A DNA stretch of 64,000 nucleotides from the NCBI RefSeq assembly GCF_006345805.1, contig NW_021835991.1, forward strand, positions 124,001-188,000. The letters run 5' to 3'. The notes beneath the pieces are model-generated. The model did not search any database and was not told the DNA's origin. It saw only the letters and a list, made by a program, of their open reading frames with translations. The DNA comes from Octopus sinensis (Eukaryota). Below, one piece after another: positions 3,866 to 60,260 of the stretch; position 1 is the stretch's first letter; each line of letters begins with the position of its first letter. Made by a program: the position numbers and the translations under genes.

Positions 3866-4425
3866 TGTCGCGAGCGCAGCGCGCGACCGAGCGCTAGACG
3901 CACTTTGACACCTAACAAGCCTATCATCAACAAATATATTTATTAAATTATTTAAAATTTTAACATGATTTAAAATTAAAATTGAAATAACTTAAGTTTT
4001 CCATTGAATCCCATAAAATATTTTATAAGTAGACCTTAATAGAAAAAGTAAAATCAATGAATACTGAACGCTAATTTGGTTTAGGTTGTGAGGGGGGTAA
4101 TAATTTGACAGATCTCATTGCTATTTTTTCGTTTTAATCTCTAAAATTAGGTCTTCTAATCAAAAATGAACTGTGCAGACAGGCTTGCTCCTTCAGAAGA
4201 TTCTTGTTTTGACATTTTTATAAATTATGAAGCATTTAGATTTTTTCTCATTATTCTAAAATATCAATTATAAATTTTAAAATATTATTTTTATTTATGA
4301 AATCGGTTTTAAAGCTCATTCTGCTTTGGCATCGATTTTAATTTTTGTTATCGAATATATTTAATCCCAAATACAAGCCTGGGTATTTGTAATTGGCCGA
4401 AAAAAAAAAAAATTTTTTTTTCGGC

Positions 4426-5595
4426 ATGACACGTTTCGTTTCTCGTGGTGCAAAAAATAAAACTATCAAAAACTCAAAATCTTCTGTGTCTCAAGAGCTT
4501 GAACGCAAAGATGAAATCCGTATCAAAGATGAGGAGGGGTCACACTCCTCTCAAGTCTCTTTGAACAATCCAAACTGTACTGAGTCTCTTGTCCTCTCGC
4601 TGCAGATAAAAAATTATGCGATTGGACGAATAAAGTCCTTTAATATTCTAACCAAATCCGAGACTGCACAGAAGGCCCGAATTACTGCCAGGAAGTCTGG
4701 GGACTTTACCCTCGAATTCTCAAATTCTAGTGATAGGGACTCGTTTGTGAATGACTTCGAGTATAACAAACCATTTGGCCAGGACGGCCATTATATTTCT
4801 GCGTGCAGTCTGCAACCATCGACCGTAGTCTTGAAGGGAATACCATCTTGGGTCTCCGAGGAAGACCTGGATCTTTACCTCAAAGAAATTCTCAACCCCG
4901 GTTTTACTTTCCAACGGTTCTACAAAAATGGACGGAGTATACCTGTTGGAAAGTTGAGTCTGAATTCGAGGGCAGAAGCCACTTCGCTTGTAAGGATGGG
5001 AATCGAAGTGGGATTTCAAAAAATACGATGCGAATGGTTTAAAAACCCAGCAACAAGATGCTTTCGCTGCCAACAATTTGGTCACATTGCTAACTTCTGC
5101 AAAGAAGTGGAAAGATGTCTTTTCTGTGGTGGTGATCATAATATGAAAATGTGCCCGATTAAAGGAAAAACTGAGAAAAAATGTATAAACTGCGGTCTGA
5201 GTGGGCATTTGGCTTGCTACGGTGGCTGCTCTTCAGCTAAGGCAGCCACTGAACAACTAAAAAAGCAGCTCAGTGCCAGGGACAGACTGGCCAAAGCAGA
5301 ACACTCAAAAACTGTATGGTCAAAAGCGGAGGCCGTTGAATCTGTATGGCGAAAACCCACAATTTCCCGCTGTTTTGACTCCTCAACGCAAACAGATGTT
5401 AGTGAAGACGCAACTTTGCCTCCCAATACACAACACACAGAGCCTCCAACCCGCTTTAAGAGGAAAGCACCAACTATCGACGTTGAGCTTACCTCTATGA
5501 TTCGCAAAATAATCGCTATATGCGATGAAAAAGGCCTCGATATCAACAATCTGTTGTCCCTTTCTCTTGGAAGGGAAAGGATTGATCAGGCGTGA
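4426..5595 (+). CDS. LINE ORF1, gag-like nucleic-acid-binding protein with three CCHC knuckles
   Basis: CFRCQQFGHIANFC, CLFCGGDHNMKMC, CINCGLSGHLACYGGC. The first ATG is at 4426; the track's TTG at 4393 lies in the 5' hairpin. Confidence 0.9.
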   Translation: MTRFVSRGAKNKTIKNSKSSVSQELERKDEIRIKDEEGSHSSQVSLNNPNCTESLVLSLQIKNYAIGRIKSFNILTKSETAQKARITARKSGDFTLEFSNSSDRDSFVNDFEYNKPFGQDGHYISACSLQPSTVVLKGIPSWVSEEDLDLYLKEILNPGFTFQRFYKNGRSIPVGKLSLNSRAEATSLVRMGIEVGFQKIRCEWFKNPATRCFRCQQFGHIANFCKEVERCLFCGGDHNMKMCPIKGKTEKKCINCGLSGHLACYGGCSSAKAATEQLKKQLSARDRLAKAEHSKTVWSKAEAVESVWRKPTISRCFDSSTQTDVSEDATLPPNTQHTEPPTRFKRKAPTIDVELTSMIRKIIAICDEKGLDINNLLSLSLGRERIDQA

Positions 5596-8222
5596 GCCCC
5601 TTTCTGTCTATTATCGCTGTGAACGCACGTTCTCTAAAGAGAAGGCGTTCAGAGATTGAGGATATGTTATCCCATAACCCCGTGGACCTTTTGATCGTAA
5701 ACGAAACAAAAATCAAAAAACATGATGATTACTACTTGGATGGCTATCGTTCCCTTGATATTAAGTGGAAGCCGGGCTCGATCGCTGGAACAGGCACTTC
5801 TATCTACTACAAATCAACTCTAAGGGTGAAAAATCTAAAAATTGTGTCCGAGGAATTGTGTGAATTCCTCACAATCGACGTCCTTCTGGAAAAAGGGTGG
5901 GTAACAATCGGAGGGATGTACTCAAAATCCCTTTCCAATTATTCATCGCTTATCAAGGACTTTTTTGCCGATAAACACAATCATTTGTCAATACTCCTCG
6001 GGGATCTAAATGCCAAATGCACATCTTTTGGCTGTCTGAGAACCAACAGGGATGGCATCATTCTTAAGAAGCTTTCAGAATCTCTCAGTTTCTCGGTCAT
6101 CACATCAAAAACCCCAAATCATTACTCACCAGGAGGGTGGGACTATTTGGGCGTAGCATTGGTCTCTATGTCTACTCTTCAATTTATGGAACAACCGTAC
6201 ACCTTAAATGATATTGGAAGTGACCATCTACCAATTTTATACAAACTCAACCTTGGACCTTTAAAGGGTAAACCAACTTTTATACGATATAACCTCTCGA
6301 CTATAAACTGGGAACACTACCGAAAATGTTTTACACTTTATCTGAGCAATTTCGCTCCTAAACTTGACGAAAATTCTTCATCTGAGGACCTCGAGAAGTC
6401 TAGCAATTCCCTTATTGGATACATAAAGTCTTATCTGGAAACATATTCTACAAAAATCGTCTCAAACAATAGGAAAACTCACATGCCAAACATGAATGTT
6501 GAAATCCTACTAAGGAAAAAACAATGTCTAAGGAACAAACTCCGGCGCTGCGCAGATTTTCGTGACCGGTCCGTTTTGGAAAGTGAAATCTTCACCATTA
6601 CGGAAGAAATAAGAAAATCGGCGAAGGTGGCGAAGGATAAAAAATGGAATACTGAGTGCAAAAAGCTACATAAAGGAAGTCCAAATTTTTGGAAGGTCTA
6701 CTCGAAATTAACCTCGACGTCTGAGAAAACTATACCTAAACTGCTAAAACAAGATGGATCCCCTGCATCTCATGAAGAAATCCCGAACATATTTGCTGAT
6801 AGTCTCAAAAGAATACAAGAAGTCAATCCGGATACAAATCTATCTGATTCAGCTTTGTTTGATATGGAAAAAGAGTTGGAAGACAATCTTAGCTCATTAC
6901 CAATGTGCTCGGAATCTATAACGTGCAAAGACGTGGAAAATGCAGTTAGATACTCCAAAAATAACGCTCCGGGAAAGGACAAGATAACCATGCGCATGTT
7001 CAAAGAAGCTCCCAAGCAACTTTACGAATATTTGGGATGTCTCTTCTCCCGCAGTGTGAGCTTGGGATACGTCCCTTCTTCATGGAAACTGACGGAGGTA
7101 AGGATGATACGGAAGCCTGGAAAACCTGGTTACTTGGCGACAAGTTATAGGCCTATAAGCCTAATTCCTACCATCAGTCGAATAATGGAAAGGGTAATGT
7201 TTGAACGACTCTCTGAACACGTCGAGAGAAATGGTTATCTCAAAGACGTGCAGTGGGGCTTTCGGAGGGGTCGTTCCTGTGCTGACTGTCTTTATACACT
7301 CAATTCGTCGATTGTAAAGGCTCTGGATTTCAAAGAGTGTCTGACAATTGTGTCTCTAGACATCTCAAAAGCCTTTGATATGGTTTGGCACCTCGGTCTC
7401 CTTAGACATCTGGCGAAGTGTCACATAGACAAAGGACTATTCCTATGGCTAAAAGACTTCCTCCGCGACAGGCGCTCTGTGATAAGCTTTCTGAACTATG
7501 ACTCGGATGAACTGAAACTTAAAAGAGGCGTCCCTCAAGGATCAGTCCTCAGTCCTCTATTATTCAACATTGTGATGAGCAATCTGCCGTCTCCTGTCAA
7601 CACACGGACGGAAATTTTGATATACGCCGATGATGTTGTAATCCTTGACATTTCATCGAAACCTGCCTTATCCGAACAAAGGATTATATCATATATGAAT
7701 ACAGTGGAGCAATGGTGCGATGAAAATATGTTCATTATTGCGCGTGAGAAGTCCGCATTACTGAGAATCACAGAAAGCAGAAATTTAATAAATTTACCGT
7801 GCCTGATCAAGAACATACCTCGACAAAACTCAATTAAATATCTTGGCTTGTTCATCGATGAAAAGGGAAACTATCTCGAAAACGCAAAATTAAGTAAAAG
7901 GAAAGCAACTAATGCTCTGTTCTGCCTGAGGAAGTTAAATTTGGAGCCTGATACTTTCCTCTACGTTTTCAATACGGTGATCCTACCGGGACTACTATAC
8001 GGAAAAGAGGGATGGTACTTCTCTAAAAAGAAGGACACCATCTTAACTAAATTTGAAAAGTCTCGCAGGCTCGCTTTGAAGCTTGCTTACCACCAAAAAG
8101 TTGAAGATCCAATCCCCCTGTGGCTTGAAAGTAAATCCTCCATGGTCGGTGAAACTGTCGAAAAAGCTATAAGTGGTTATAAATCCAACTCAATTGTCAC
8201 TGGGACGTACCTGCAGAGGTAG
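5592..8222 (+). CDS. LINE ORF2, APE endonuclease + reverse transcriptase
   Basis: VNARSL, NETK, GDLNAK, SDHLP; YRPISL, QWGFR, LDISKAFD, GVPQGSVLSPLLF, YADD, IKYLG. 876 aa with no stops. Confidence 0.95.
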   Translation: MSPFLSIIAVNARSLKRRRSEIEDMLSHNPVDLLIVNETKIKKHDDYYLDGYRSLDIKWKPGSIAGTGTSIYYKSTLRVKNLKIVSEELCEFLTIDVLLEKGWVTIGGMYSKSLSNYSSLIKDFFADKHNHLSILLGDLNAKCTSFGCLRTNRDGIILKKLSESLSFSVITSKTPNHYSPGGWDYLGVALVSMSTLQFMEQPYTLNDIGSDHLPILYKLNLGPLKGKPTFIRYNLSTINWEHYRKCFTLYLSNFAPKLDENSSSEDLEKSSNSLIGYIKSYLETYSTKIVSNNRKTHMPNMNVEILLRKKQCLRNKLRRCADFRDRSVLESEIFTITEEIRKSAKVAKDKKWNTECKKLHKGSPNFWKVYSKLTSTSEKTIPKLLKQDGSPASHEEIPNIFADSLKRIQEVNPDTNLSDSALFDMEKELEDNLSSLPMCSESITCKDVENAVRYSKNNAPGKDKITMRMFKEAPKQLYEYLGCLFSRSVSLGYVPSSWKLTEVRMIRKPGKPGYLATSYRPISLIPTISRIMERVMFERLSEHVERNGYLKDVQWGFRRGRSCADCLYTLNSSIVKALDFKECLTIVSLDISKAFDMVWHLGLLRHLAKCHIDKGLFLWLKDFLRDRRSVISFLNYDSDELKLKRGVPQGSVLSPLLFNIVMSNLPSPVNTRTEILIYADDVVILDISSKPALSEQRIISYMNTVEQWCDENMFIIAREKSALLRITESRNLINLPCLIKNIPRQNSIKYLGLFIDEKGNYLENAKLSKRKATNALFCLRKLNLEPDTFLYVFNTVILPGLLYGKEGWYFSKKKDTILTKFEKSRRLALKLAYHQKVEDPIPLWLESKSSMVGETVEKAISGYKSNSIVTGTYLQR

Positions 8223-13073: not shown

Positions 13074-13146
13074 GCCTCGGTGGTGTAGCGGTTATCACGC
13101 TCGCCTAACACGCGAGAGGTTCTGGGTTCAACTCCCAGTCGAGGTA
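13074..13146 (+). tRNA. tRNA-Val(AAC)
   Basis: Cloverleaf: acceptor GCCTCGG/TCGAGGT, D arm GTGTAGCGGTTATCAC, anticodon stem CTCGC/GCGAG with loop CTAACAC, T arm CTGGG-TTCAACT-CCCAG. A T-run follows downstream. Confidence 0.93.
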
Positions 13147-20960: not shown

Positions 20961-21883
20961 TACCGCTGTTCGTCTAATGTGTTTTCTTCTTGGTTTTCTT
21001 TGATTTTTTTAATTTTTTCAATAATTTCTTTGCTGAGCTTCACAATACGCATAGTTCCACGCTTTTTTATAAATTAAAAAGTAAAATATTTCTCTAAAAT
21101 ATTTAACTAATTGTTAATATTGATGTATAAAATAACTATTTATATATTTTTTAAATATTTTTAAGCCAGGTGTTTATTTATTCGCTTGTCCATTTATCCG
21201 ACTGTGACATATAATGGGCTCACCGATCGTTACGTTTTCCGGCCGGTTGCTGTCGAAACCCTGGGATCGATTGGGAATGAGTCGTTGTGCTTCCTCAAGT
21301 GTATTGGACGTCTCAAGACCTTGAGAACACACAATCCTCTGGAGACGAGATGGCTCCTCCAGAACGTGTCCCAAGCAATAGTGGGGGGAAACATTATGAA
21401 GAAATAATTAAGAAATTTCATAAAATCTATGCTTCTCAGGAAAATGAAAATATAGGTGATCGCTAAAATATTATGAAAATCGGGAAAATGTTAGGAAAGT
21501 CAGATAAAAAACATAATTTTTTTTATTTTTATAAATATTTTATGTTTTCAGTCATTTTTGTATAAAAAATATTTAATCTATATTGTGAGTTCATGTTTCA
21601 ACTATAAAATATTATTCAAATTGCCTTTTGCATCCGCAGATTTTTGATCAAAATCGGCGGATTTGAAAGGTTTTATTGTATTTAGTCTTATTTAATTTGT
21701 GACGACAATTAAAGATCCTTTTTTATTTGTTCTCTCAGTGCAGGCTGTACCCCTGTCAAAAATAAACAATATTGGACATTGAGTATTTTGTATAAAAATT
21801 AATTACTTTTTTAACTTAAGTTTGGTTAGTATTTTTGTTGTTAGAGTATTTTAAGAGAATCCAAATTGAATTGTTTATAATCT

Positions 21884-21953
21884 GATCGTCATGTGGTTCA
21901 CCTTCTCGTGGAGACGATGGATGCTGATTTCTCATCAGCAACAAACAGAACCA
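21884..21953 (+). ncRNA. HDV-like self-cleaving ribozyme fold at the LINE 5' end
   Basis: P1 ATCGTC/GACGAT, P2 TGGTTC/GAACCA, P3 ACC/GGA around L3 TTCTCGT, GG for P1.1, P4 TGCTGAT/ATCAGCA, then CAAA. It begins at the TSD boundary and has small deviations from consensus. Confidence 0.65.
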
Positions 21954-22009
21954 ATTTTTCCCCCTTGCCAACCAACCTGTCAACGGTTTGGTTGGTAGTG
22001 GCTACGGGA

Positions 22010-22081
22010 CGAGCGCCAAGCTTACGTTCCCTGACTCTATTGTTGATTCGGTGTGGAGATGTGGAACAAAACCCTGGACCT
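22010..22081 (+). other. 2A-like ribosomal stop-go peptide (..LTLLLIRCGDVEQNPG|P)
   Basis: Exact D-V-E-x-N-P-G-P motif at 22058-22081, in frame and immediately before the APE domain. Confidence 0.85.
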
Positions 22082-25000
22082 GAGCCTATTAGAACACTAA
22101 CCATCCTTCAATTGAACATCAACGGGATTTCCAAGAAATGCAATGACCTACGCTACTTTCTACACACGAACTCTATTGATATAGCTCTTATTCAAGAGAC
22201 CAAACTTACTCAAAAATCCCAAACCCCCCGTTTTAAGGGATATTCCACCATTCGTCGTGACCGCCAGTCTGGAAAGCCTGGCGGTGGTCTCATTACTCTC
22301 ATTCACGAGGCCATTCCCTTTGCAGACTCAACTGCCAACATTGAATCTCTCTTAACTAATGATCGATTTACCGAAATTTCATCTATTCAAATTAACATTA
22401 ACAAGATATGTTACTCTGTTGTTAACACATATATCCCCCGATTTCGTCATGTGCTCCCAATTATACACCGAACTTACTGCCTCTTTTTTTCAATTGAAAA
22501 CTGTATTCTATGTGACGACTTCAACGCCCACCATCCTCTCTGGTTATCCACAAACAAAACTGACAAACGTGGCCAGCAAATCACAACGGATGCGGAAGAA
22601 TTGATCACTCTAAACAACCCTCTTCTACACACCCGCTGTGCAATGCGACCTGGAGATTCAAACACTTCTCCTGACATTACCTTATGTTCCCCAAACATCG
22701 CCCTCGACGCCAAATGGACAGTTCTGTACGACCTACCAACGGACCACAATCCTATTCTAATCAAAATAAACCATCACCCTGTAAAGAAGAGAATTACGAA
22801 GACCTACATTAACTACAAACGTGGGAAATGGGACTCGTTCAGGAGTGAAACTGAACGTATATTCAGTAATTTTTCTTGCTCCTCTTTCAATCATTTGACG
22901 CTGCCGTTGCTTTCTTTACTAGTACACTTCTTTCTGCGGACAAAAAATTTATTCCCCGCGGCTTCATCCGAAATCACGGCCTCCACTTCCCCCCACCTAT
23001 CATTGAACTATTCAAAAACGAAGGAGGATCAAATCGACGACTTCTATCAATGGAAATGGAGAATCCCTAGCAGAAATCAACAAACAAATTGACGAATTAA
23101 TCAAGAAACATAAAACTGACGAATGGAATGATTTTATCACTTCAATAACCCCAAATACTGGATCCCGTGCTTTCTGGAGAACCCTCAAGAAAATTCACAC
23201 GAGGCAAACATGTCCCCTCTCACATGCCACCGGTATCTCGACCAAAAAATGTCCTATCTTTCCAGGATCAAGCCAACATCTTAATTCGCCATTATGCAAA
23301 AATCAGTCACCTTCCTACCCCAAAGGATCTCCGTTTCGTAAGAAATCACATTATAAGTCAAATGACATTCTACTGACTATATTAACATCCCAGAATCATT
23401 TACCAGGCAACTTGTTGTTAACTCGCGGAATTCTAACGCCAGAGGTCCTGATGGCCTTGCCATCCACCACCTAAAAAATCTGGGTCCTAATGGCTTTCTG
23501 GCTCTGACCAATTTAATCGAATACTCGATCAACCATGGTCTGGTTCCTATGCTTTGGAAGAAATCTACCATCATCCCTATCCCAAAGCCAAATCGTGATA
23601 CCTCTGACCCCTCCTCTTTTCGACCTATCTCTTTGATCTCAGTGGTTTCAAAAATAACAGAGCGAGTTGTATTGAGCATCATAAAACCTTTCCTCCCATT
23701 TGCTGAATCTCAACATGGCTTTCGTTCTTTGCATTCCACTTCCACCCATCTTTCAAAACTGACACAATTCATTGCGGATGGGTTTAACAATCATAAGCCA
23801 CCTCAAAGAACAATTATTGCATCCATCGACATTGAAAAGGCATTTGACAGAACGTCAAGACACGTTCTGTGTAGGAAAATAACCGATACGGAATTCCCCT
23901 ACCAAATAAAGTCATGGCTACTCTCTTTTCTCTCTGGGCGTCTTGGTCGCACCACAATCATGTCTTCTTACTCACGCTACAAATACTTGCCTAACGGAGT
24001 TCCCCAAGGCTCGGTCCTTTCACCTGCCTTATTTAACTTACATCTGTCAAATATCCCGACGAACAATAATACTCTACTTCTCTCCTACGCTGATGACTTA
24101 ATTTTTGCCTCCCGCCACCAAAACATAATCACCGCTTCTGGATTTCTGCAGGAACACATGAACACTCTTTCGTCCTGGCTGAAATGCAATCTTCTTCAAC
24201 CTTCTCCTTCCAAATCATCTGTTACGCTATTCACAACTGACCGCCGTCAGTTCAACTTAGAGCCTAAACTATTCCTAGACAACACTCCACTCCCAGTTGA
24301 AAAATCCCCCAAAATCTTGGGTCTGATATTTGATTGCTGTTTGTCCTTCTCGAAACATGTTTCATATATCTGTGGAAAATCCCAGAAAAAACTCAATGTG
24401 CTCCGAGCTATTGCGGGGACTTCATTTGGGCAGGATAAGGAAAGTCTAACAACTGTATACAAGCAGTTTATTAGAACAACTATGAACTACGCCATCCCTG
24501 CTTGGGGTTCCTGCTTATCTAATACAAACCTTGAAAAACTTCAGAGAACTCAAACTCAGCATTACGAATTATTACCGGCTGTCTAAAAACGACACCTACC
24601 GACCACCTACATTGGGAATCGAAAATCCTTCCAATCAGTGACCATTTTGAAATGCTCGGGCTGCAATTTCTTGACAAATGCCGAACCCTAAATCACCCTG
24701 GCTACTTCCTCTGGCACTCCACTAACAACAGGAGAATAGTTCCGACCCTCGCGGACAAAGTCCGCAAGCTTATACGATCCCCTCCGACATTAACCAGAAG
24801 GGGATTCACGACCTGGTGGCTACGAGGGCAATCAGATGTCTGGAATAAACAAGCTTCTGGGACGCCTTCCGCCGCCAATTAATAAGATCGAATCCTCCCT
24901 CTCAAGAGAAGCCCGAGTGAACTTGGCTCGTCTCCGCTGTGGCCACCATACTGGCCTACACGATTATCGCATAAAAATCGGTCTTGGTGAATAACCCCTT

Positions 25001-25279
25001 CCTATTCCCTCAACGACCTTTTCTCCTGTCCAGGCCCGCCTTCTACTTCCTCGGAACACCGGATCACGATCGGGGATCTTTGGGAGCGTCCGACATTGGC
25101 CCTAACGTTCTTGTTAGCCACCGGCTTCCTTCAATTGAAGGGGCCGGGGTAAATAAATAAATAAATAAATAAATTGTTTATAATCTAGATTCTTAATGTC
25201 AAAATTCTTTAACAAATAACGAAAACGGAAACTGAATAACTATTTTATAATCCATTAATATATACGAATCTAGATTCCT

Positions 25280-28400: not shown

Positions 28401-29408
28401 TTGCTAATTTTCCAGTTGATTATTGCATAGAAAAAACTTACCGGAAACAGTGAAGACTCTCTGTTTCATACAGAAAAGTATTCTATTTTTTATAATGCTA
28501 GAATAATGTGCAGTCACCGTAACTCAGCCAAGAAGACGGTTGATCACTTGGCGACAAGGTGTGATTGAATGCTAGTGACTATTTACAAAGACACAGTGAA
28601 CTATGTTGTGCAGGTAGTATAGAATTACGAAATCGAAGGTTGAAAATCTATTCTTTTAGTCGAAGAGTGCGAATTACTCTGTGAAGATTCGTATCGATGC
28701 AACAATAAATAAAAATACGAAAGTCCAGAGTAACGAGGCGGACATGAGAAGCACAATCTGCTTATAGAGATTGTGATGATCTCTCAAAAAGACCTGATCG
28801 ATCAAAAAGTGCAGATTGTAGGAATTTTTGAGTAACCAGCCATCCCATGTTAATACAATAGGTACATGAACCACATGTCTGACTCTGCAGTTCCTTGCGT
28901 AATTCGCAGAATTACTGTGGAAATGTTTGTAATTAGAATATAGTTTATTTTTTATTAATTATTGTTTAATTATCCTAATTTTAATGGTAAACCTAATGAA
29001 TTATTCCACGTGTGAGCACGCAGTTGATTCACCTTGTGGTGATGTTTATATAATTAACCCTTTTCTTATTTTTTATATAATTGGATTTAGTGGGAATATA
29101 TCGAGATGCAGTTTCTTTTAATGATTAAATTATTTGAAATTTCATCATTTTGTGATATTTTTCGAATTTATTCCTATAATTTGTTTCTTTTACTCATTTT
29201 GAAATTTCTGTAACGCTAATATTTTTTGAAATATTTATTTATTCAATTTTTAATCATTTCTGGGACTTTTTCATATACTTATCTTTTCCCACGACCAGTT
29301 AAGTTTTTTATATACAGTATAAACTCCATTTGGGGAATGAATTTTGTAAAAATTGCCTGAAATTTTCTTCATTTTTATAAACTAACATTTTTAAGTACTA
29401 AAATTTTT

Positions 29409-56105: not shown

Positions 56106-57077
56106 TTAATATTGAGTTAGCTTTGGTTCAATTTGAGGAATTGTTTTCTCAAAATGCTCTACGTCGGCATGCCAATCAACTCCACTAAGAGAGAATATAT
56201 TCGAGAATCTATGATCCCAGAGGACCTCAGTTGAATGGTAAGAAGTCCGTGATTTCACGGAATAACCAGACGATTCACTGACTCCTGTCACTGTGACGAT
56301 AATCTCACATCCATCAGCAATGAACTTTGATTGGTCGTATTTGTAAAGAGGGCTGTTTTCGTCTATCATGTGAGAGACCGTTATTGGCCAGCCAGAGTCA
56401 GGAGAATTTGAATCAAAATTGGTTGCAAGACGTTTAGAGTGAAAAGGAATCATTTCCCCTTCGGCAGTAATTCGAGAACAAATGAGACACATTTTAACAT
56501 TAGAAGCTATAATTTGAGACTTTTGGATATTAAGAATTCGACAAATAAAATATTTTGATTGATTCCTTTTACAAACAACCGCATTTTTTGTAAAAATCCA
56601 AGTTTTTTGCCTTGAAAGCGGATTGGATATTTTTTTGAATGCAAGTCCAAAAGCCAAAGATTCCAAACAAATTCCAATCAGTGTTTGCAATAAGAGAACT
56701 ATGCCTGAAAGAGGACAGTTTGAACTAACAAACATATGGCCGTATCCAACAGTGCTTTGTGTTGCCATTGAAAAAACCATTGCTCCTAAAAAAGTGTTTA
56801 AATTATGAACACATTCCGTTTCACTGTATAAAAACAGAATGTACCAGATCAGTGCAAACACAACAGAACTAAGTAAATATATAAAAATGATGAAAATAAA
56901 TAATGGTATCCAATTCAGTAAGAGCAGAGATGTCAAAAAATCGGAAATAACACGTTTTTTTATTAAACCGGAAATTCTACATTTAATTTTTCCGTTTTTT
57001 TCAACTAATCGGGAGTTCGTTCTGGCCCACTTTTTGGATGAACTTTGGTGGGAAGAAGGAGCTTCCCCCACATTCAT
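56106..57077 (-). CDS. Inward-rectifier K+ channel (Kir family), intronless, Kir7-like pore
   Basis: RLVEKNG, slide helix DFLTSLL..W, M1, ECV, FSMATQSTVGYGHMF..NCP, M2 with E, cytoplasmic GWPITVSHMIDENSPLY, EIIVTVTG, SRTSY..EVLWDHRF. Confidence 0.93.
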   Translation of the reverse strand: MNVGEAPSSHQSSSKKWARTNSRLVEKNGKIKCRISGLIKKRVISDFLTSLLLLNWIPLFIFIIFIYLLSSVVFALIWYILFLYSETECVHNLNTFLGAMVFSMATQSTVGYGHMFVSSNCPLSGIVLLLQTLIGICLESLAFGLAFKKISNPLSRQKTWIFTKNAVVCKRNQSKYFICRILNIQKSQIIASNVKMCLICSRITAEGEMIPFHSKRLATNFDSNSPDSGWPITVSHMIDENSPLYKYDQSKFIADGCEIIVTVTGVSESSGYSVKSRTSYHSTEVLWDHRFSNIFSLSGVDWHADVEHFEKTIPQIEPKLTQY

Positions 57078-57980: not shown

Positions 57981-60260
57981 TGAATGAATGAATGAATGAA
58001 TTTTTATTAACGGAAAAGCCGAAAAAAGAGGGAGAAAGTTAATGAGACAACGTATGCCTCTTCTTAGTTGTTTCCCTCTTTTTTTTTTTTTTTTAATATT
58101 TAATTCGAGAAGAAAAGGCTCTCTCAAGAACACTTCCAACCGTTTCCGTCGCGTCTTCCATCACTTGAGGGATGGGTTGGTCCAACTGGAGTCCATTTGC
58201 CAATTTGATGGCATATCGCCTCGTCTTTTCGAGCTTAGCGATAATGCCATCCCTTTCAGCAGTAGGATACCATCCCTCGAACCCGTAGGTAAGCAATGGT
58301 TCGACGCACGTTTTATAAACATATAAAAACGTTTCCGGGGAAAGGTGGAAGTGAATTATGCTCCTGAGAATTTGAGCGCATTTCCTTCTCCTCGAGTCGA
58401 TGTATCTGAAGTAAGAACCCTTGGATCCAACTTCAACCCCAAGGTATTTCAGGTTCTCCGTTACTGTAAACCCATAGAGGTTTCTCGGCGGTTTTCGTTT
58501 TGCTCCCTGTTTTGCAATCCAAGTGGCGGTGCACTTTTCTTTTGCAAGCGTCAGTCCTTTTGATATGCACCATTCTTCCACTCTTGTCACGTATCCTTTT
58601 AACTTCCTCCACGAGATGTCTTTTCTCCACAAAGCATCCGTTATTAATATGTCGTCCGCGTAGATCATGAGACGACTGGTAGGATCTTTCGGTTTTGGAA
58701 TATCAGCAACGTAAATATTAAAAAGCAGGGGGCTCAAGACCGAGCCTTGAGGTACCCCTCTTTTGAGATCGACAGATTCCGACAAACGGTTTCCGCATCG
58801 TATGTATGACCTTCTCATTGATAAATAGCTCTTCAGCCAATTGACCGTTTTAGACCCGGGTTTGCTCTTGGCGACACTTTCCAAGAGGCCCAGGTGCCAT
58901 ACGCTGTCAAAAGCTTTTGAGACATCGAGGCAGATAGCAATAGTCGCTGTATTATTAGCAAGACTAAGCGAGATGACTTTCTCGAGTTCTCCGAAACAAT
59001 CACCACAGGATCTTTTTCGTCGGAATCCCCACTGCTCTACTGCAAGTGCACCTGATTCCTCTACGAAGTTCGAAAGTCTTGTGAAGACAATCCGTTCCAT
59101 AATTTTAGAGACGGAGCATATTAGGCTTATCGGCCTATAGTTCTCTGCATGGTCCTTTATTTTTCCAGGCTTTGGAATCATACGTACGATTGACTTTTTC
59201 CAAGAGTCCGGTACGTATCCAAGTCTCCAGCTTGCATTGTATAGTGCGGTCAAGTATCGTAGGAGAATATTTGGAGCATGTTTGAATACAGAAATTGGAA
59301 TGTAGTCATGGCCGGGTGCATTATTCTTGCAGCTCATAATTGCGGCATACGTTTCTTCCAACGTTATGTCTCTGCACAGTGGTCCCGTATGACTCAAATT
59401 AGCTCTTAGACTTCTCTGAGCCTCACATATAACTTCTTTCGGAACCATGTCGATCGGATCCACCTCTTGAACTTTTGCCAGTTGACTTCGCAGATGTGAG
59501 GGAACTTCATCGAGCGGGATATCTATTCCTTCAGTTGTTTTTAGTCGGATCTCTTCTCCTTTGTTCTCCATATTACTCAGTCTGTTGAAAACCTTCCAAA
59601 AATGAGGGTTTTTCTTATTCAGTTTCGAGCATTGACTCTTCCAAGCAAGGTCTGAATGTTTTTTTGCGACATCATTTATCTCTATTTTCACGGTACGAAT
59701 CTTATCCCGAAGACGAATACGATCTATGGGGTCACTGCATCGTCTTAGCTTCTTTTCAAGGTTTCCCTTCCATTTTATAAGTTTTCCCAAAGATTCGTCA
59801 ATCCGGGTTTTTCTGTTAGTATTTGACATGATGTATTTCCTGATTGAAGATTTTCGGAGAAAGTCCAGTATAGCTTCTCTGAGAATTTTATCAAGTTTTT
59901 CAATTTGTATATTCGAAGAGATGTTTTGTATTGGATACGGTGTCAAATGCTTTTTCATTGATACCTCAAGGTCCGACCAGATTGTCCGAGACGTATCGTA
60001 TCCGATAAACAGATCTTCGCATATCGTAGATGATGTTCGCATACACAAGGATTGAGGTAGGTGATCACTACCAATGTTTATCTCAATCCTTGGTATGCTG
60101 CATTGATGAACAAGATCTGCCGATACGAGGAAAACTCCAATACAATCCTCTCCATAACAAGAGAAGTGGTTTGGTTCTCGTGAGGTCAAAACACTAAAAC
60201 CGCAGTTCTCCGATAATCTGAGGAGTATATTACCGTCCGAATTTGTGTTGGCACATCGTA
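57981..60260 (-). mobile_element. 5'-truncated LINE related to 4391-8385; ORF 58093-60260 is open (partial APE + RT)
   Basis: SDHLP, YRPISL, EQWGFR, LDVSKAFD, GVPQGSVLSPLLF, YADD, LKYLG. The 3' end is AATAAA followed by (TTCA)5. Confidence 0.92.

What the first reader, a model, noticed from the sequence alone, without database searches (positions are those of the whole stretch)
21884..21953. HDV-like ribozyme fold beginning exactly at the 5' boundary of a LINE
The nested double pseudoknot order is complete: P1 21885-21890/21913-21918, P2 21894-21899/21948-21953, P3 around L3 TTCTCGT (compare HDV TCCTCG and CPEB3 TTCACGT), GG at 21919-21920, the P4 hairpin, then C-A-A-A at 21942-21945. The predicted cleavage site coincides with the boundary defined independently by a 15-bp TSD. 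HDV-like ribozymes are known in R2, RTE and L1Tc/Ingi elements. Deviations (6-bp P1, one P3 mismatch, 2 extra nt in J4/2) may be decay in this frameshifted copy. An in-frame ATG (21917) lies inside the fold.
Basis: partly seen in the sequence, partly recalled or inferred. Interest (0 to 1): 0.78.

Follow-up and report, generated by a model that had tools for sequence, protein, structure and literature searches.

The report
Self-cleaving ribozyme at a LINE's start
The first 70 bases of a dead jumping gene (a LINE) fold on paper into an HDV-like self-cleaving RNA, and related LINEs carry the same fold at their starts, so this is very probably the device that trims the element's RNA to its exact 5' end; the kind of device is already known, but not in this 2A-peptide-bearing group of LINEs.

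Summary
The fold sits at the 5' edge of a 3.3-kb frameshifted APE+RT LINE (21884-25173), whose ends are set by a 13-15-bp target-site duplication and a (TAAA)6 tail. One correction: P1 starts at 21885, one base inside the boundary (21883|21884).

Taken alone the fold is weak evidence. No Rfam family matches, the MFE z-score is -0.75, a loose descriptor gives 9 hits per window against 6.4 in shuffles, and a leave-one-out covariance model gives E about 1.

Comparison with relatives makes the case. Eight of 16 related loci, seven families, carry the same double pseudoknot at or just before their ORF start. Most encode an N-terminal 2A peptide, as this element does. All helices differ in sequence between families, while the core bases are kept: L3 U and G, the P3 C-G pair, and C-N-A-A in J4/2. 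Two features outside my descriptor are also present: P1.1 pairing and the A-A after the catalytic C. In two families, similarity between copies begins at P1.

Verdict: a relic of an HDV-like 5'-processing ribozyme, with a layout like sea-urchin drz-Spur-3 and an architecture like L1Tc (ribozyme, short peptide, 2A, APE-RT). Cleavage is untested. It is a new member of a known kind.

The parts
21869..21883 (+). 5' target-site duplication AATTGTTTATAATCT
   Evidence: An exact second copy lies at 25172-25186. A 14-mer search gave 2 matches against 0.16 expected.
21884..21884 (+). First base of the element (G). It is either ribozyme position +1 of a 7-position P1 lying opposite G21919, or one extra base at the 5' junction.
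   Evidence: The TSD ends at 21883. In the 7-position register J1/4 becomes GA and both P1.1 pairs are Watson-Crick (C21905-G21920, U21904-A21921). This is read from the sequence and is an inference.
21885..21890 (+). P1 5' strand ATCGTC
   Evidence: Pairs perfectly with 21913-21918.
21891..21893 (+). J1/2 (ATG)
   Evidence: parse.
21894..21899 (+). P2 5' strand TGGTTC
   Evidence: Pairs perfectly with 21948-21953. It is also the outer helix of the MFE fold.
21900..21912 (+). P3 (ACC/GGA: two C-G pairs plus an A21900.A21912 mismatch) enclosing the 7-nt L3 TTCTCGT (21903-21909)
   Evidence: Relatives have ACC/GGT, GCC/GGT, GCG/CGT and GCC/GGC. L3 position 1 (U) and position 6 (G) are invariant in them.
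21913..21918 (+). P1 3' strand GACGAT
21919..21921 (+). J1/4 GGA. G21919 and G21920 can pair with C21905 and U21904 of L3 to form P1.1.
   Evidence: P1.1 was not part of my descriptor, yet its first pair is Watson-Crick in all nine sequences when read by hand (7 of 8 in the automatic parse).
21922..21940 (+). P4 hairpin: 7 bp TGCTGAT/ATCAGCA, loop TTCTC
21941..21947 (+). J4/2 A-C-A-A-A-C-A. C21942 is the presumed catalytic cytosine, followed by N-A-A.
   Evidence: C-N-A-A right after P4 is present in 7 of 8 sequences tested, but in only 8% of false descriptor hits. The columns for C49, A51 and A52 are invariant in A8.
21948..21953 (+). P2 3' strand GAACCA
21917..22081 (+). Leader ORF starting at the ATG inside P1's 3' strand and ending in a 2A-like 'StopGo' motif. 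G-D-V-E-Q-N-P-G-P is encoded at 22055-22081.
   Evidence: Translation. The same N-terminal 2A is seen in relatives. The motif and its position match those described for non-LTR elements in PMC3708506.
22493..22757 (+). AP-endonuclease domain of the LINE
   Evidence: Pfam PF14529, E 4e-11, residues 201-288 of the ORF that starts at 21893.
23549..24586 (+). Reverse-transcriptase ORF, in a different frame from the endonuclease ORF, so the copy is frameshifted
   Evidence: Pfam RVT_1, E 5e-33. ORF list.
25150..25173 (+). (TAAA)6 3' tail of the LINE
25172..25186 (+). 3' target-site duplication

Best explanation
Bases 21884/5-21953 are the HDV-like self-cleaving ribozyme that forms the 5' terminus of a single-ORF APE+RT LINE (21884-25173).

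Proposed mechanism:
1. The element is transcribed, probably as part of a longer read-through transcript.
2. The nascent RNA folds into the nested double pseudoknot (P1, P1.1, P2, P3, P4).
3. C21942 in J4/2 catalyses cleavage at the foot of P1. This leaves a 5'-OH RNA whose first base is the first base of the element.
4. The uncapped RNA is translated from an AUG inside or just after the fold.
5. The short, unconserved leader peptide is shed at the 2A 'StopGo' site (GDVEQNPG|P), releasing the endonuclease-RT protein.
6. Target-primed reverse transcription copies the RNA to its cleaved 5' end, so each full-length new copy begins with P1 directly against the target-site duplication.

Shown here: the fold, its position at the TSD boundary, the 2A motif, and the same fold with co-varying helices in related LINE families.
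Inferred: the catalysis, the read-through transcription, cap-independent translation and 2A activity.

This particular copy is dead (frameshifts). Its ribozyme may be weakened by the A.A mismatch in P3.
For: (1) All elements are present at the stated coordinates, and P1, P2 and P4 are entirely Watson-Crick. It is the only such match in 128 kb, against 0.05 expected.

(2) It abuts the TSD-defined 5' end to within one base.

(3) Eight related loci, seven families, have the same architecture on the sense strand at or just upstream of the ORF start. They share 25-39% amino-acid identity with this element in the endonuclease region, and all but L013 come from the ENA protein hits. Per-locus shuffle probabilities are 0.001-0.047. 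Background sense-strand hits elsewhere in those loci are about 1 per 10 kb.

(4) Helix sequences differ in every family. 13 of 15 pairs show changes on both sides, while the middle C-G pair of P3, L3 U1 and G6, the catalytic C and the following A-A are invariant.

(5) Two features not demanded by the descriptor are present: P1.1 first pair (C-G or U-A) and C-N-A-A. Both occur together in 6 of 8 real sequences, including the window, against 1.7% of 686 false hits.

(6) The alignable families L003 and L009 show compensatory P2 changes (U-A to A-U, U.G to A-U).

(7) Similarity between copies starts at P1 in L002/L012 and within 2 nt of P1 in L003/L009. This is what is expected if the RNA template ends at the cleavage site.

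(8) drz-Spur-3, an experimentally active ribozyme, has the same layout: 6-bp P1, 3-bp P3, 7-nt L3 of the form U..C.CGU, GG, CCAA. My descriptor recovers it.

(9) Literature. HDV-like ribozymes process the 5' ends of R2 and other LINEs, with P1 of 6-7 bp, J1/4 of 0-2 nt, and an active example with a P3 mismatch (PMC3774820). L1Tc has the arrangement ribozyme, short peptide, 2A, APE-RT (PMC3185411).
Against: - No Rfam HDV-type family matches the window at gathering score or at E<=10. None matches the relatives either.
- The MFE of the 70-mer is no better than shuffles (z = -0.75), although pseudoknots are not modelled there.
- A covariance model built only from the relatives (P1+P3+P4, core-normalised seed) ranks the site second in the window at 13.7 bits, E about 1.
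- The loose descriptor is not specific in this AT-rich DNA.
- In this copy P3 has only two pairs, the foot of P1 is A-U rather than G.U or G-C, and an unpaired A precedes the catalytic C.
- The cleavage site implied by a 6-bp P1 is one base inside the TSD boundary.
- Five further LINE relatives showed no complete fold (L004, L005, L007, L008, L010). Three 2A-bearing loci of uncertain kind also showed none (L015, L022, L023).
- The helices in the comparative alignment were found by requiring pairing, so their near-100% pairing is partly circular.
- No cleavage data exist.
Confidence: 0.8

Rival explanations
1. The fold is a chance match. A permissive double-pseudoknot pattern happens to fit the start of this LINE, and the RNA does nothing.
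For: The loose descriptor gives as many hits in the real window as in shuffles (9 against 6.4 +/- 2.5). 9% of shuffles of the local 300 nt give a hit. The covariance model gives E about 1. Rfam finds nothing. The MFE z-score is -0.75. P3 is imperfect.
Against: The match would have to fall within one base of an independently defined boundary and be the only all-Watson-Crick match in the window (0.05 expected). It would also have to carry P1.1 plus C-N-A-A (1.7% of false hits). And it would have to recur at the same place in seven other LINE families with different helix sequences.
Confidence: 0.05
2. The conserved 5' structure is real, but its main job is not cleavage. It could be an internal promoter, a cap-independent translation starter or a binding site for the element's own protein, with the HDV-like shape incidental or vestigial.
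For: In L1Tc the same 77 nt act as promoter and as ribozyme (PMC3185411). The R2 ribozyme is reported to support translation initiation and to bind R2 protein (PMC6765202). Here the first AUG lies inside the fold. In L001, L002, L011 and L012 the ORF runs through it.
Against: The bases that are invariant across families are the ones tied to catalysis in HDV-like ribozymes: L3 U and G, the J4/2 C followed by A-A, and P1.1. Element copies begin at the foot of P1. That is explained by cleavage or by exact transcription initiation, but not by protein binding alone. The roles are not mutually exclusive.
Confidence: 0.12
3. The ribozyme existed in the active master element, but this copy's version is dead because of changes at 21912 and perhaps 21919. 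On this view the window holds only a fossil. This refines the main explanation rather than replacing it.
For: The copy has frameshifts between the APE and RT ORFs and after RT. P3 is ACC/GGA here where the closest-looking relatives have ACC/GGT (L001, L011). G21884 faces G21919, where L006 and L009 have G.U at the foot of P1.
Against: The TSDs are identical (15 of 15) and the tail is intact, so the copy is not very old. An R2 ribozyme with a P3 mismatch is active (PMC3774820). No family consensus is available to show what the ancestral bases were.
Confidence: 0.5

Closest known systems
drz-Spur-3, an HDV-like ribozyme of the sea urchin Strongylocentrotus purpuratus (experimentally active; sequence rebuilt from primers in PMC5984629)
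   Same: Same order and sizes: 6-bp P1, short J1/2, 6-7-bp P2, 3-bp P3, 7-nt L3 with U at position 1 and C-G at positions 5-6, GG after P1, a hairpin P4, and J4/2 beginning C-N-A-A.
   Different: All helix sequences differ. Its genomic context was not examined here. The window copy has a P3 mismatch, an extra A before the catalytic C, and two extra bases before P2'.
L1Tc / ingi 5' module of trypanosomes (Pr77 = L1TcRz HDV-like ribozyme, followed by a 2A peptide)
   Same: Same architecture: TSD, ribozyme in the first 70-77 nt with cleavage at +1 of the element, short peptide, 2A, AP endonuclease, RT, in a single ORF (PMC3185411; PMC3708506).
   Different: L1Tc also carries RNase H and a C-terminal chaperone domain. 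Only about 190 codons separate the RT ORF from the tail here, which leaves no room for them. In L1Tc P1.1 is a single pair, and the 77 nt are also a promoter. Sequence homology to Pr77 was not tested. The hosts are kinetoplastids, whereas the nearest named RT relatives here are from Octopus sinensis.
R2 retrotransposon ribozymes, plus those reported for the R1, R4, RTE and LOA clades
   Same: An HDV-like fold at the extreme 5' end processes the element out of a co-transcript. P1 is 6-7 bp, P2 at least 5 bp, P4 is variable, and J1/4 is 0-2 nt. Few bases are conserved beyond the catalytic C. An active example with a P3 mismatch exists (PMC3774820; clade list in PMC5786205).
   Different: R2 is a site-specific element with a restriction-like endonuclease, lies in 28S rDNA and often has a J1/2 of hundreds of nt. 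This element is an APE-type LINE inserted in AT-rich DNA, has a 3-nt J1/2 and a 2A leader. Its clade was not resolved here.
Twister-variant ribozymes at the 5' end of Perere-3 LINEs in Schistosoma mansoni
   Same: A self-cleaving ribozyme at the LINE 5' end, the TSD directly next to the cleavage site, a short microsatellite-like 3' tail, and cleavage proposed to permit translation (PMC8501958).
   Different: It belongs to a different ribozyme class (twister). None of its conserved sequence blocks occur here, and Rfam finds no twister.
CPEB3 intronic ribozyme of mammals
   Same: Same fold family. Its L3, TTCACGT (as printed in PMC5984629), is identical to the L3 of relatives L008 and L011 and differs from the window's TTCTCGT at one base.
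   Different: It is intronic in a host gene, not at a transposon terminus. My descriptor did not recover it.

Membership tests
HDV-like self-cleaving ribozymes | Nested double pseudoknot in the strand order P1-P2-P3-L3-P3'-P1'-J1/4-P4-J4/2-P2' | tested here: met
   All strands are found in this order at 21885-21953.
HDV-like self-cleaving ribozymes | P1 of 6-7 bp starting at the cleavage site, usually with G at +1 (G.U or G-C) | tested here: inconclusive
   P1 is 6 perfect bp but starts with A21885-U21918. G21884 precedes it and faces G21919. Relatives have G-C, G.U, C-G or U-A at this position.
HDV-like self-cleaving ribozymes | P3 of 3 bp closing a 7-nt L3 | tested here: inconclusive
   The window has 2 C-G pairs plus an A.A mismatch. 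7 of the 8 relative sequences (6 of 7 families) have 3 pairs. An active R2 ribozyme with a P3 mismatch is on record (PMC3774820).
HDV-like self-cleaving ribozymes | Conserved L3 U and G (the reverse-wobble pair) | tested here: met
   L3 is TTCTCGT, with U at position 1 and G at position 6. Both are invariant in the relatives. These two bases were required by my descriptor. Their role is taken from PMC3774820.
HDV-like self-cleaving ribozymes | P1.1: one or two pairs between L3 and the bases just 3' of P1 | tested here: met
   C21905-G21919 and U21904.G21920, or C-G plus U-A in the 7-position register. The first pair is C-G or U-A in all nine sequences by hand parse. The background rate is 25%.
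HDV-like self-cleaving ribozymes | Catalytic C at the start of J4/2 | tested here: met
   C21942 lies one base after P4 and is followed by A-A-A. C-N-A-A is present in 7 of 8 sequences against 8% of false hits.
HDV-like self-cleaving ribozymes | Divalent-metal-dependent self-cleavage giving a 5'-OH product, abolished by C-to-U at the catalytic position | not testable with these tools
   This needs a transcription and cleavage assay.
HDV-like self-cleaving ribozymes | Match to a curated Rfam HDV-type covariance model | tested here: not met
   No hit for the window or for the relatives. The fold family has very little conserved sequence (about five bases; PMC4870747), and its pseudoknots were not represented in my own model either, so this is weak negative evidence.
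LINE 5'-terminal processing ribozymes (R2 / RTE / L1Tc type) | [quoted passage not shown] | tested here: met
   In the window the TSD ends at 21883 and P1 starts at 21885, one base off. In L002/L012 identity starts exactly at P1. In L003/L009 it starts within 2 nt.
LINE 5'-terminal processing ribozymes (R2 / RTE / L1Tc type) | Compensatory change in helices among copies or related elements | tested here: met
   Met across related families: 13 of 15 pairs have changes on both sides, with compensatory P2 changes between L003 and L009. Within the window's own family this could not be tested, because no second copy was found.
2A-bearing single-ORF APE-type non-LTR elements | The G-D-(V/I)-E-x-N-P-G-P motif about 40-80 residues from the N-terminus of the endonuclease-RT ORF | tested here: met
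   GDVEQNPGP is encoded at 22055-22081, residues 47-55 counted from ATG 21917, directly before the APE domain. The criterion is from PMC3708506. 2A activity was not tested.

The most novel reading that the evidence does not exclude
The ribozyme and the 2A peptide may form one conserved 'double self-liberation' cassette shared by a broad, previously unrecognised set of single-ORF LINEs of marine invertebrates (molluscs and others), and by L1Tc/ingi of trypanosomes.

In this reading the RNA cuts itself free of any upstream host transcript. The 2A site then cuts the enzyme free of whatever peptide the ribozyme-overlapping leader happens to encode. That would relieve the ribozyme sequence of coding constraint and let the element be expressed from any read-through transcript without its own promoter or an ORF1.

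The two papers I read on 2A in non-LTR elements do not mention ribozymes at all. [quoted passage not shown]
Probability: 0.35. Interest if true: 0.7.

Novelty: new member of a known kind. Interest (0 to 1): 0.55.

Why it matters
HDV-like ribozymes are hard to find because only about five bases are conserved, and curated models miss this whole group. This result gives a concrete, testable set of eight new candidate sequences (seven families) plus the window copy, in LINEs that also carry an N-terminal 2A peptide.

If cleavage is confirmed, three things follow:
- The list of LINE lineages that define their 5' ends by self-cleavage grows.
- It would explain how these ORF1-less, apparently promoter-less elements are expressed from read-through transcripts.
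- RNA self-cleavage and 2A ribosome skipping, previously seen together only in trypanosome L1Tc/ingi, would be linked as a recurring pair.

For genome annotation it offers a marker for full-length 5' ends of this LINE group.

Tried and rejected
- **Rfam.** Searches at gathering score and at permissive E-values, on the window and on seven relatives, found no HDV-type family.
- **Plain MFE folding.** It recovers P2 and P4 but is not better than shuffles.
- **Same-family copies.** None in the window. None closer than 39% in the protein database. None in the metagenome contig scan.
- **Covariance model R1**, built from two natural sequences (L006, L009), was too sequence-specific and found only their relative L003.
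- **Covariance model R2.** MAFFT could not align the full-length ribozymes structurally. I therefore built the seed from core-normalised sequences, with J1/2 and the interior of P4 trimmed, and one or two unpaired bases dropped in L003, L011 and L013. A first attempt contained a typing error in L013 and a shifted register, and was discarded. R2 places the window site second at E about 1, so it does not give independent significance.
- **Relatives without a complete fold:** L004, L005, L007 and L010. L008 has P3-L3-P4-J4/2-P2, but I could find no P1 5' strand.
- **Other 2A-bearing loci** L015, L022 and L023 show no fold and look like a different kind of gene.
- **Clade assignment** (CR1 / L2 / Rex1 / Crack against Ingi / Vingi) could not be settled. 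No reference LINE library is available, and the Vingi, Ruminski 2011 and Webb-Luptak 2011 papers are not held.
- **Coding constraint as the cause of conservation.** Rejected, because the peptides encoded across the fold share no similarity between families.
- **Twister or hammerhead as an alternative class.** Rejected, because no Rfam hit and none of the conserved twister blocks of PMC8501958 are present.

Full report
**What is in the window**

The window is AT-rich (34% G+C) and full of transposon remains. At 21884-25173 lies one 3.3-kb non-LTR retrotransposon.
- An ORF with an AP-endonuclease domain (Pfam PF14529, E 4e-11) is followed, in another frame, by a reverse-transcriptase ORF (RVT_1, E 5e-33).
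- It ends in a (TAAA)6 tail and is flanked by the direct repeat AATTGTTTATAATCT, at 21869-21883 and 25172-25186.
- The copy is frameshifted and is the only one in the window.
- The ORF is open from the first base of the element. Its first ATG is at 21917. Residues 47-55 from that ATG read GDVEQNPGP (22055-22081), a 2A 'StopGo' motif sitting directly before the endonuclease.

**Checking the observation**

- P1: ATCGTC/GACGAT (21885-90 / 21913-18).
- P2: TGGTTC/GAACCA (21894-99 / 21948-53).
- P3: ACC/GGA, with one A.A mismatch, around L3 TTCTCGT.
- GG at 21919-20.
- P4: a 7-bp hairpin (21922-40).
- J4/2: A-CAAA-CA, with the C at 21942.

Two corrections are needed. The TSD boundary is 21883|21884 and P1 begins at 21885, so the agreement is to within one base. 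An alternative register makes G21884 the +1 base of a 7-position P1, facing G21919. In that register J1/4 is GA and both P1.1 pairs are Watson-Crick. The 7-nt J4/2 is within the 4-8 nt range seen in the relatives.

**How strong the fold is on its own**

It is not strong.
- Rfam gives no HDV-type match at gathering score or at E<=10 on a 281-nt slice.
- The MFE fold recovers P2 and P4, but its energy is ordinary (z = -0.75).
- I wrote a descriptor scanner with these settings: P1 6-7 bp, P2 at least 5-6 bp, P3 3 bp with up to 1 mismatch, 7-nt L3 with U at position 1 and G at position 6, a P4 stem of at least 4 bp, and a C in the first two bases of a 3-8-nt J4/2, with G.U pairs allowed.
- That scanner finds 9 matches in the window against 6.4 +/- 2.5 in dinucleotide shuffles. 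9% of shuffles of the local 300 nt give a match.
- The candidate is, however, the only match whose P1 and P2 are all Watson-Crick (0.05 expected per window). It also lies at a position fixed beforehand by the TSD.
- The scanner recovers the experimentally active sea-urchin ribozyme drz-Spur-3 as a positive control, but not CPEB3, so it is neither fully general nor very specific.

**Evidence from relatives**

No second copy of this family could be found. The closest endonuclease proteins in the 5.8-billion-protein collection are 33-39% identical, and a metagenome scan gave only distant relatives. Many of those relatives share the N-terminal 2A, often followed by a PHD finger.

I fetched the DNA of twelve relatives and eleven metagenome loci, and looked at the 5' region of 16 loci in all.

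On the sense strand, at or just upstream of the ORF start, eight loci from seven families contain a compact match:

| Locus | P1 | J1/2 | P2 | P3 | L3 | P3' | P1' | J1/4 | P4 | J4/2 | P2' |
|---|---|---|---|---|---|---|---|---|---|---|---|
| L001 | GGCAAT | - | AGGCTCT | ACC | tgttcgc | GGT | GTTGCC | ac | P4 | caaa | GGAGCCT |
| L002 / L012 | CTTCCA | aat | TGGTGCCG | GCC | tctacgc | GGT | TGGAAG | - | P4 | ccaaat | CGGCACCA |
| L003 | GGTCCT | gg | TGTGGTC | GCC | tcttcgt | GGT | GGGACC | ag | P4 | acccaatc | GGCTACA |
| L009 | GGTCCT | ggca | AAGAC | GCA | tccatgt | GGT | GGGACT | gc | GCTCggaaGAGC | ccaatc | GTCTT |
| L006 | GGTCCC | gaa | GATATC | GCG | tgctcga | CGT | GGGACT | gc | AGTCaaaaGACT | caaac | GATATT |
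| L011 | GTTGGAC | aaga | GTTGGG | ACC | ttcacgt | GGT | GTCCAAC | ga | P4 | cgaa | CCCAAC |
| L013 | GCAGCAC | a | ACTCCCA | GCC | tccaagt | GGC | GTGCTGC | gga | CCCCtcacGGGG | acgaa | TGGGAGT |

- Shuffles of each 300-nt region give a match with probability 0.001-0.047.
- Elsewhere on the sense strand of these loci the background is about one hit per 10 kb.
- Hits on the antisense strand are common. That strand is G+T-rich and G.U pairs were allowed, so those hits carry no weight.

**Covariation and conserved core**

In a core alignment of the seven families (A8), several bases are invariant: the middle C-G pair of P3, the U and G of L3, the J4/2 C, and the two A's that follow one base later. 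Every P1 and P4 pair, and one P3 pair, changes on both sides. Overall 13 of 15 pairs do so, and 95% of cells are paired against about 40% when partners are slid.

That alignment was built around the structure and the helices were found by requiring pairing, so these counts are partly circular.

Two features were not in the descriptor.
- The first P1.1 pair (L3 position 3 with the base after P1) is C-G or U-A in all nine sequences when each is read in its own 6- or 7-bp register.
- J4/2 begins C-N-A-A, optionally after one base, in 7 of 8.
- Among 686 false hits from shuffles, only 1.7% have both features. The window candidate and five relatives have both in the automatic parse.
- Between the two alignable families L003 and L009, P2 shows compensatory changes.

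The peptides encoded across the fold are unrelated between families. The conservation is therefore at the RNA level.

**Position at the element's end**

L002 and L012 are two copies of one family on different contigs. Their flanks are unrelated, and identity begins exactly at the C of CTTCCA, the first base of P1. For L003 and L009, similarity begins at (AA)GGTCCT. In the window the TSD abuts the fold. This is what is expected if the RNA template ends at the ribozyme cut.

**A negative result to weigh**

A covariance model trained only on the relatives (R2: P1, P3 and P4 modelled; seed sequences trimmed as described under tried-and-rejected) places 21885-21952 second in the window at 13.7 bits, E about 1. 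Without the positional prior and without P2, Infernal cannot separate it from noise. A fold with about five conserved bases (PMC4870747) has little information for such a model.

**Most likely mechanism**

The element is transcribed, probably by read-through. The 5' RNA folds and cuts itself at the foot of P1, using C21942. The uncapped RNA is translated from an AUG in or just after the fold. The 2A site releases the endonuclease-RT from the leader peptide. Reverse transcription to the cleaved end then gives copies that begin with P1.

Only the sequence features are shown here. Catalysis, translation mode and 2A activity are inferred from the described behaviour of R2 and L1Tc ribozymes (PMC3774820, PMC3185411, PMC6765202) and of non-LTR 2A sequences (PMC3708506).

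The window copy is dead, and its P3 mismatch may have weakened the ribozyme. An active R2 ribozyme with a P3 mismatch is known.

**Comparison with what is known**

- The fold layout is closest to drz-Spur-3 (GACACT ga GTGAGAA ACG tccccgt CGT AGTGTC gg ... ccaa TTCTCAC).
- The element architecture is closest to L1Tc: TSD, 77-nt ribozyme, short peptide, 2A, APE-RT.
- The papers describing 2A in CR1, L2, Rex1, Crack and Ingi elements of metazoans never mention ribozymes.
- A full-text search for HDV-like ribozymes together with CR1 found only the schistosome twister paper.
- The clade of this element is unresolved. It has no room for an RNase H domain. Its relatives carry the 2A-PHD-APE arrangement described for CR1/Crack-type elements. 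Its RT is 54-58% identical to uncharacterised Octopus sinensis proteins.

**Verdict**

This is a new member, probably a new subgroup, of a known kind of element. Its moderate interest comes from the recurring ribozyme-plus-2A pairing.

Noticed in passing
window 22055-22081 (+): A 2A-like 'StopGo' motif (GDVEQNPGP) is encoded 47-55 residues after the ATG inside the ribozyme and directly before the endonuclease domain. Most related LINEs have the same N-terminal motif, often followed by a PHD finger.
   Followed up: partly
L008 1440-1510 (+): A partial HDV-like core lies upstream of a 2A-bearing LINE ORF: GCC ttcacgt GGC, a 5-bp P4, cgaaat, and a 5-bp P2. I could find no P1 5' strand, so the copy is possibly 5'-truncated or rearranged.
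   Followed up: partly
L015 298-350; L022 1240-1420; L023 2030-2215: These loci encode a CGDVEQNPGP 2A motif after a different, hydrophobic leader (MGISIEQWRC...). They have no HDV-like fold upstream and may be a different kind of 2A-bearing gene or element.
   Followed up: no
window 13074-13146 (+): A tRNA gene, the only Rfam match in the window at gathering score (59.5 bits).
   Followed up: no
window 4393-8222 (+): Another LINE with two overlapping ORFs: a 400-aa ORF1 with zinc-knuckle-like Cys/His motifs and an 876-aa endonuclease-RT ORF2. Its 5' end was not examined for a ribozyme.
   Followed up: no
window 58093-60189 (-): A 698-aa LINE ORF (partial endonuclease, then RT) on the minus strand. 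The top hit of covariance model R2 (58189-58243, minus strand, E 0.91) lies inside its 3' part, lacks P3 and L3, and looks like chance.
   Followed up: partly
window 56106-57077 (-): A 323-aa ORF with a potassium-channel selectivity-filter motif (TVGYG), probably an inward-rectifier-type channel exon. It is the one likely host gene seen.
   Followed up: no
window 23549-24586 (+): The nearest named relatives of the RT are uncharacterised proteins of Octopus sinensis (54-58% identity over about half the query). This hints at a mollusc or other lophotrochozoan source, but the source organism was not determined.
   Followed up: partly
window 28885-29016 (+): The only descriptor match with a perfect 3-bp P3. 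It relies on several G.U pairs and an 85-nt AT-rich 'P4', and is not at any element boundary I could see, so I judge it a chance match.
   Followed up: no
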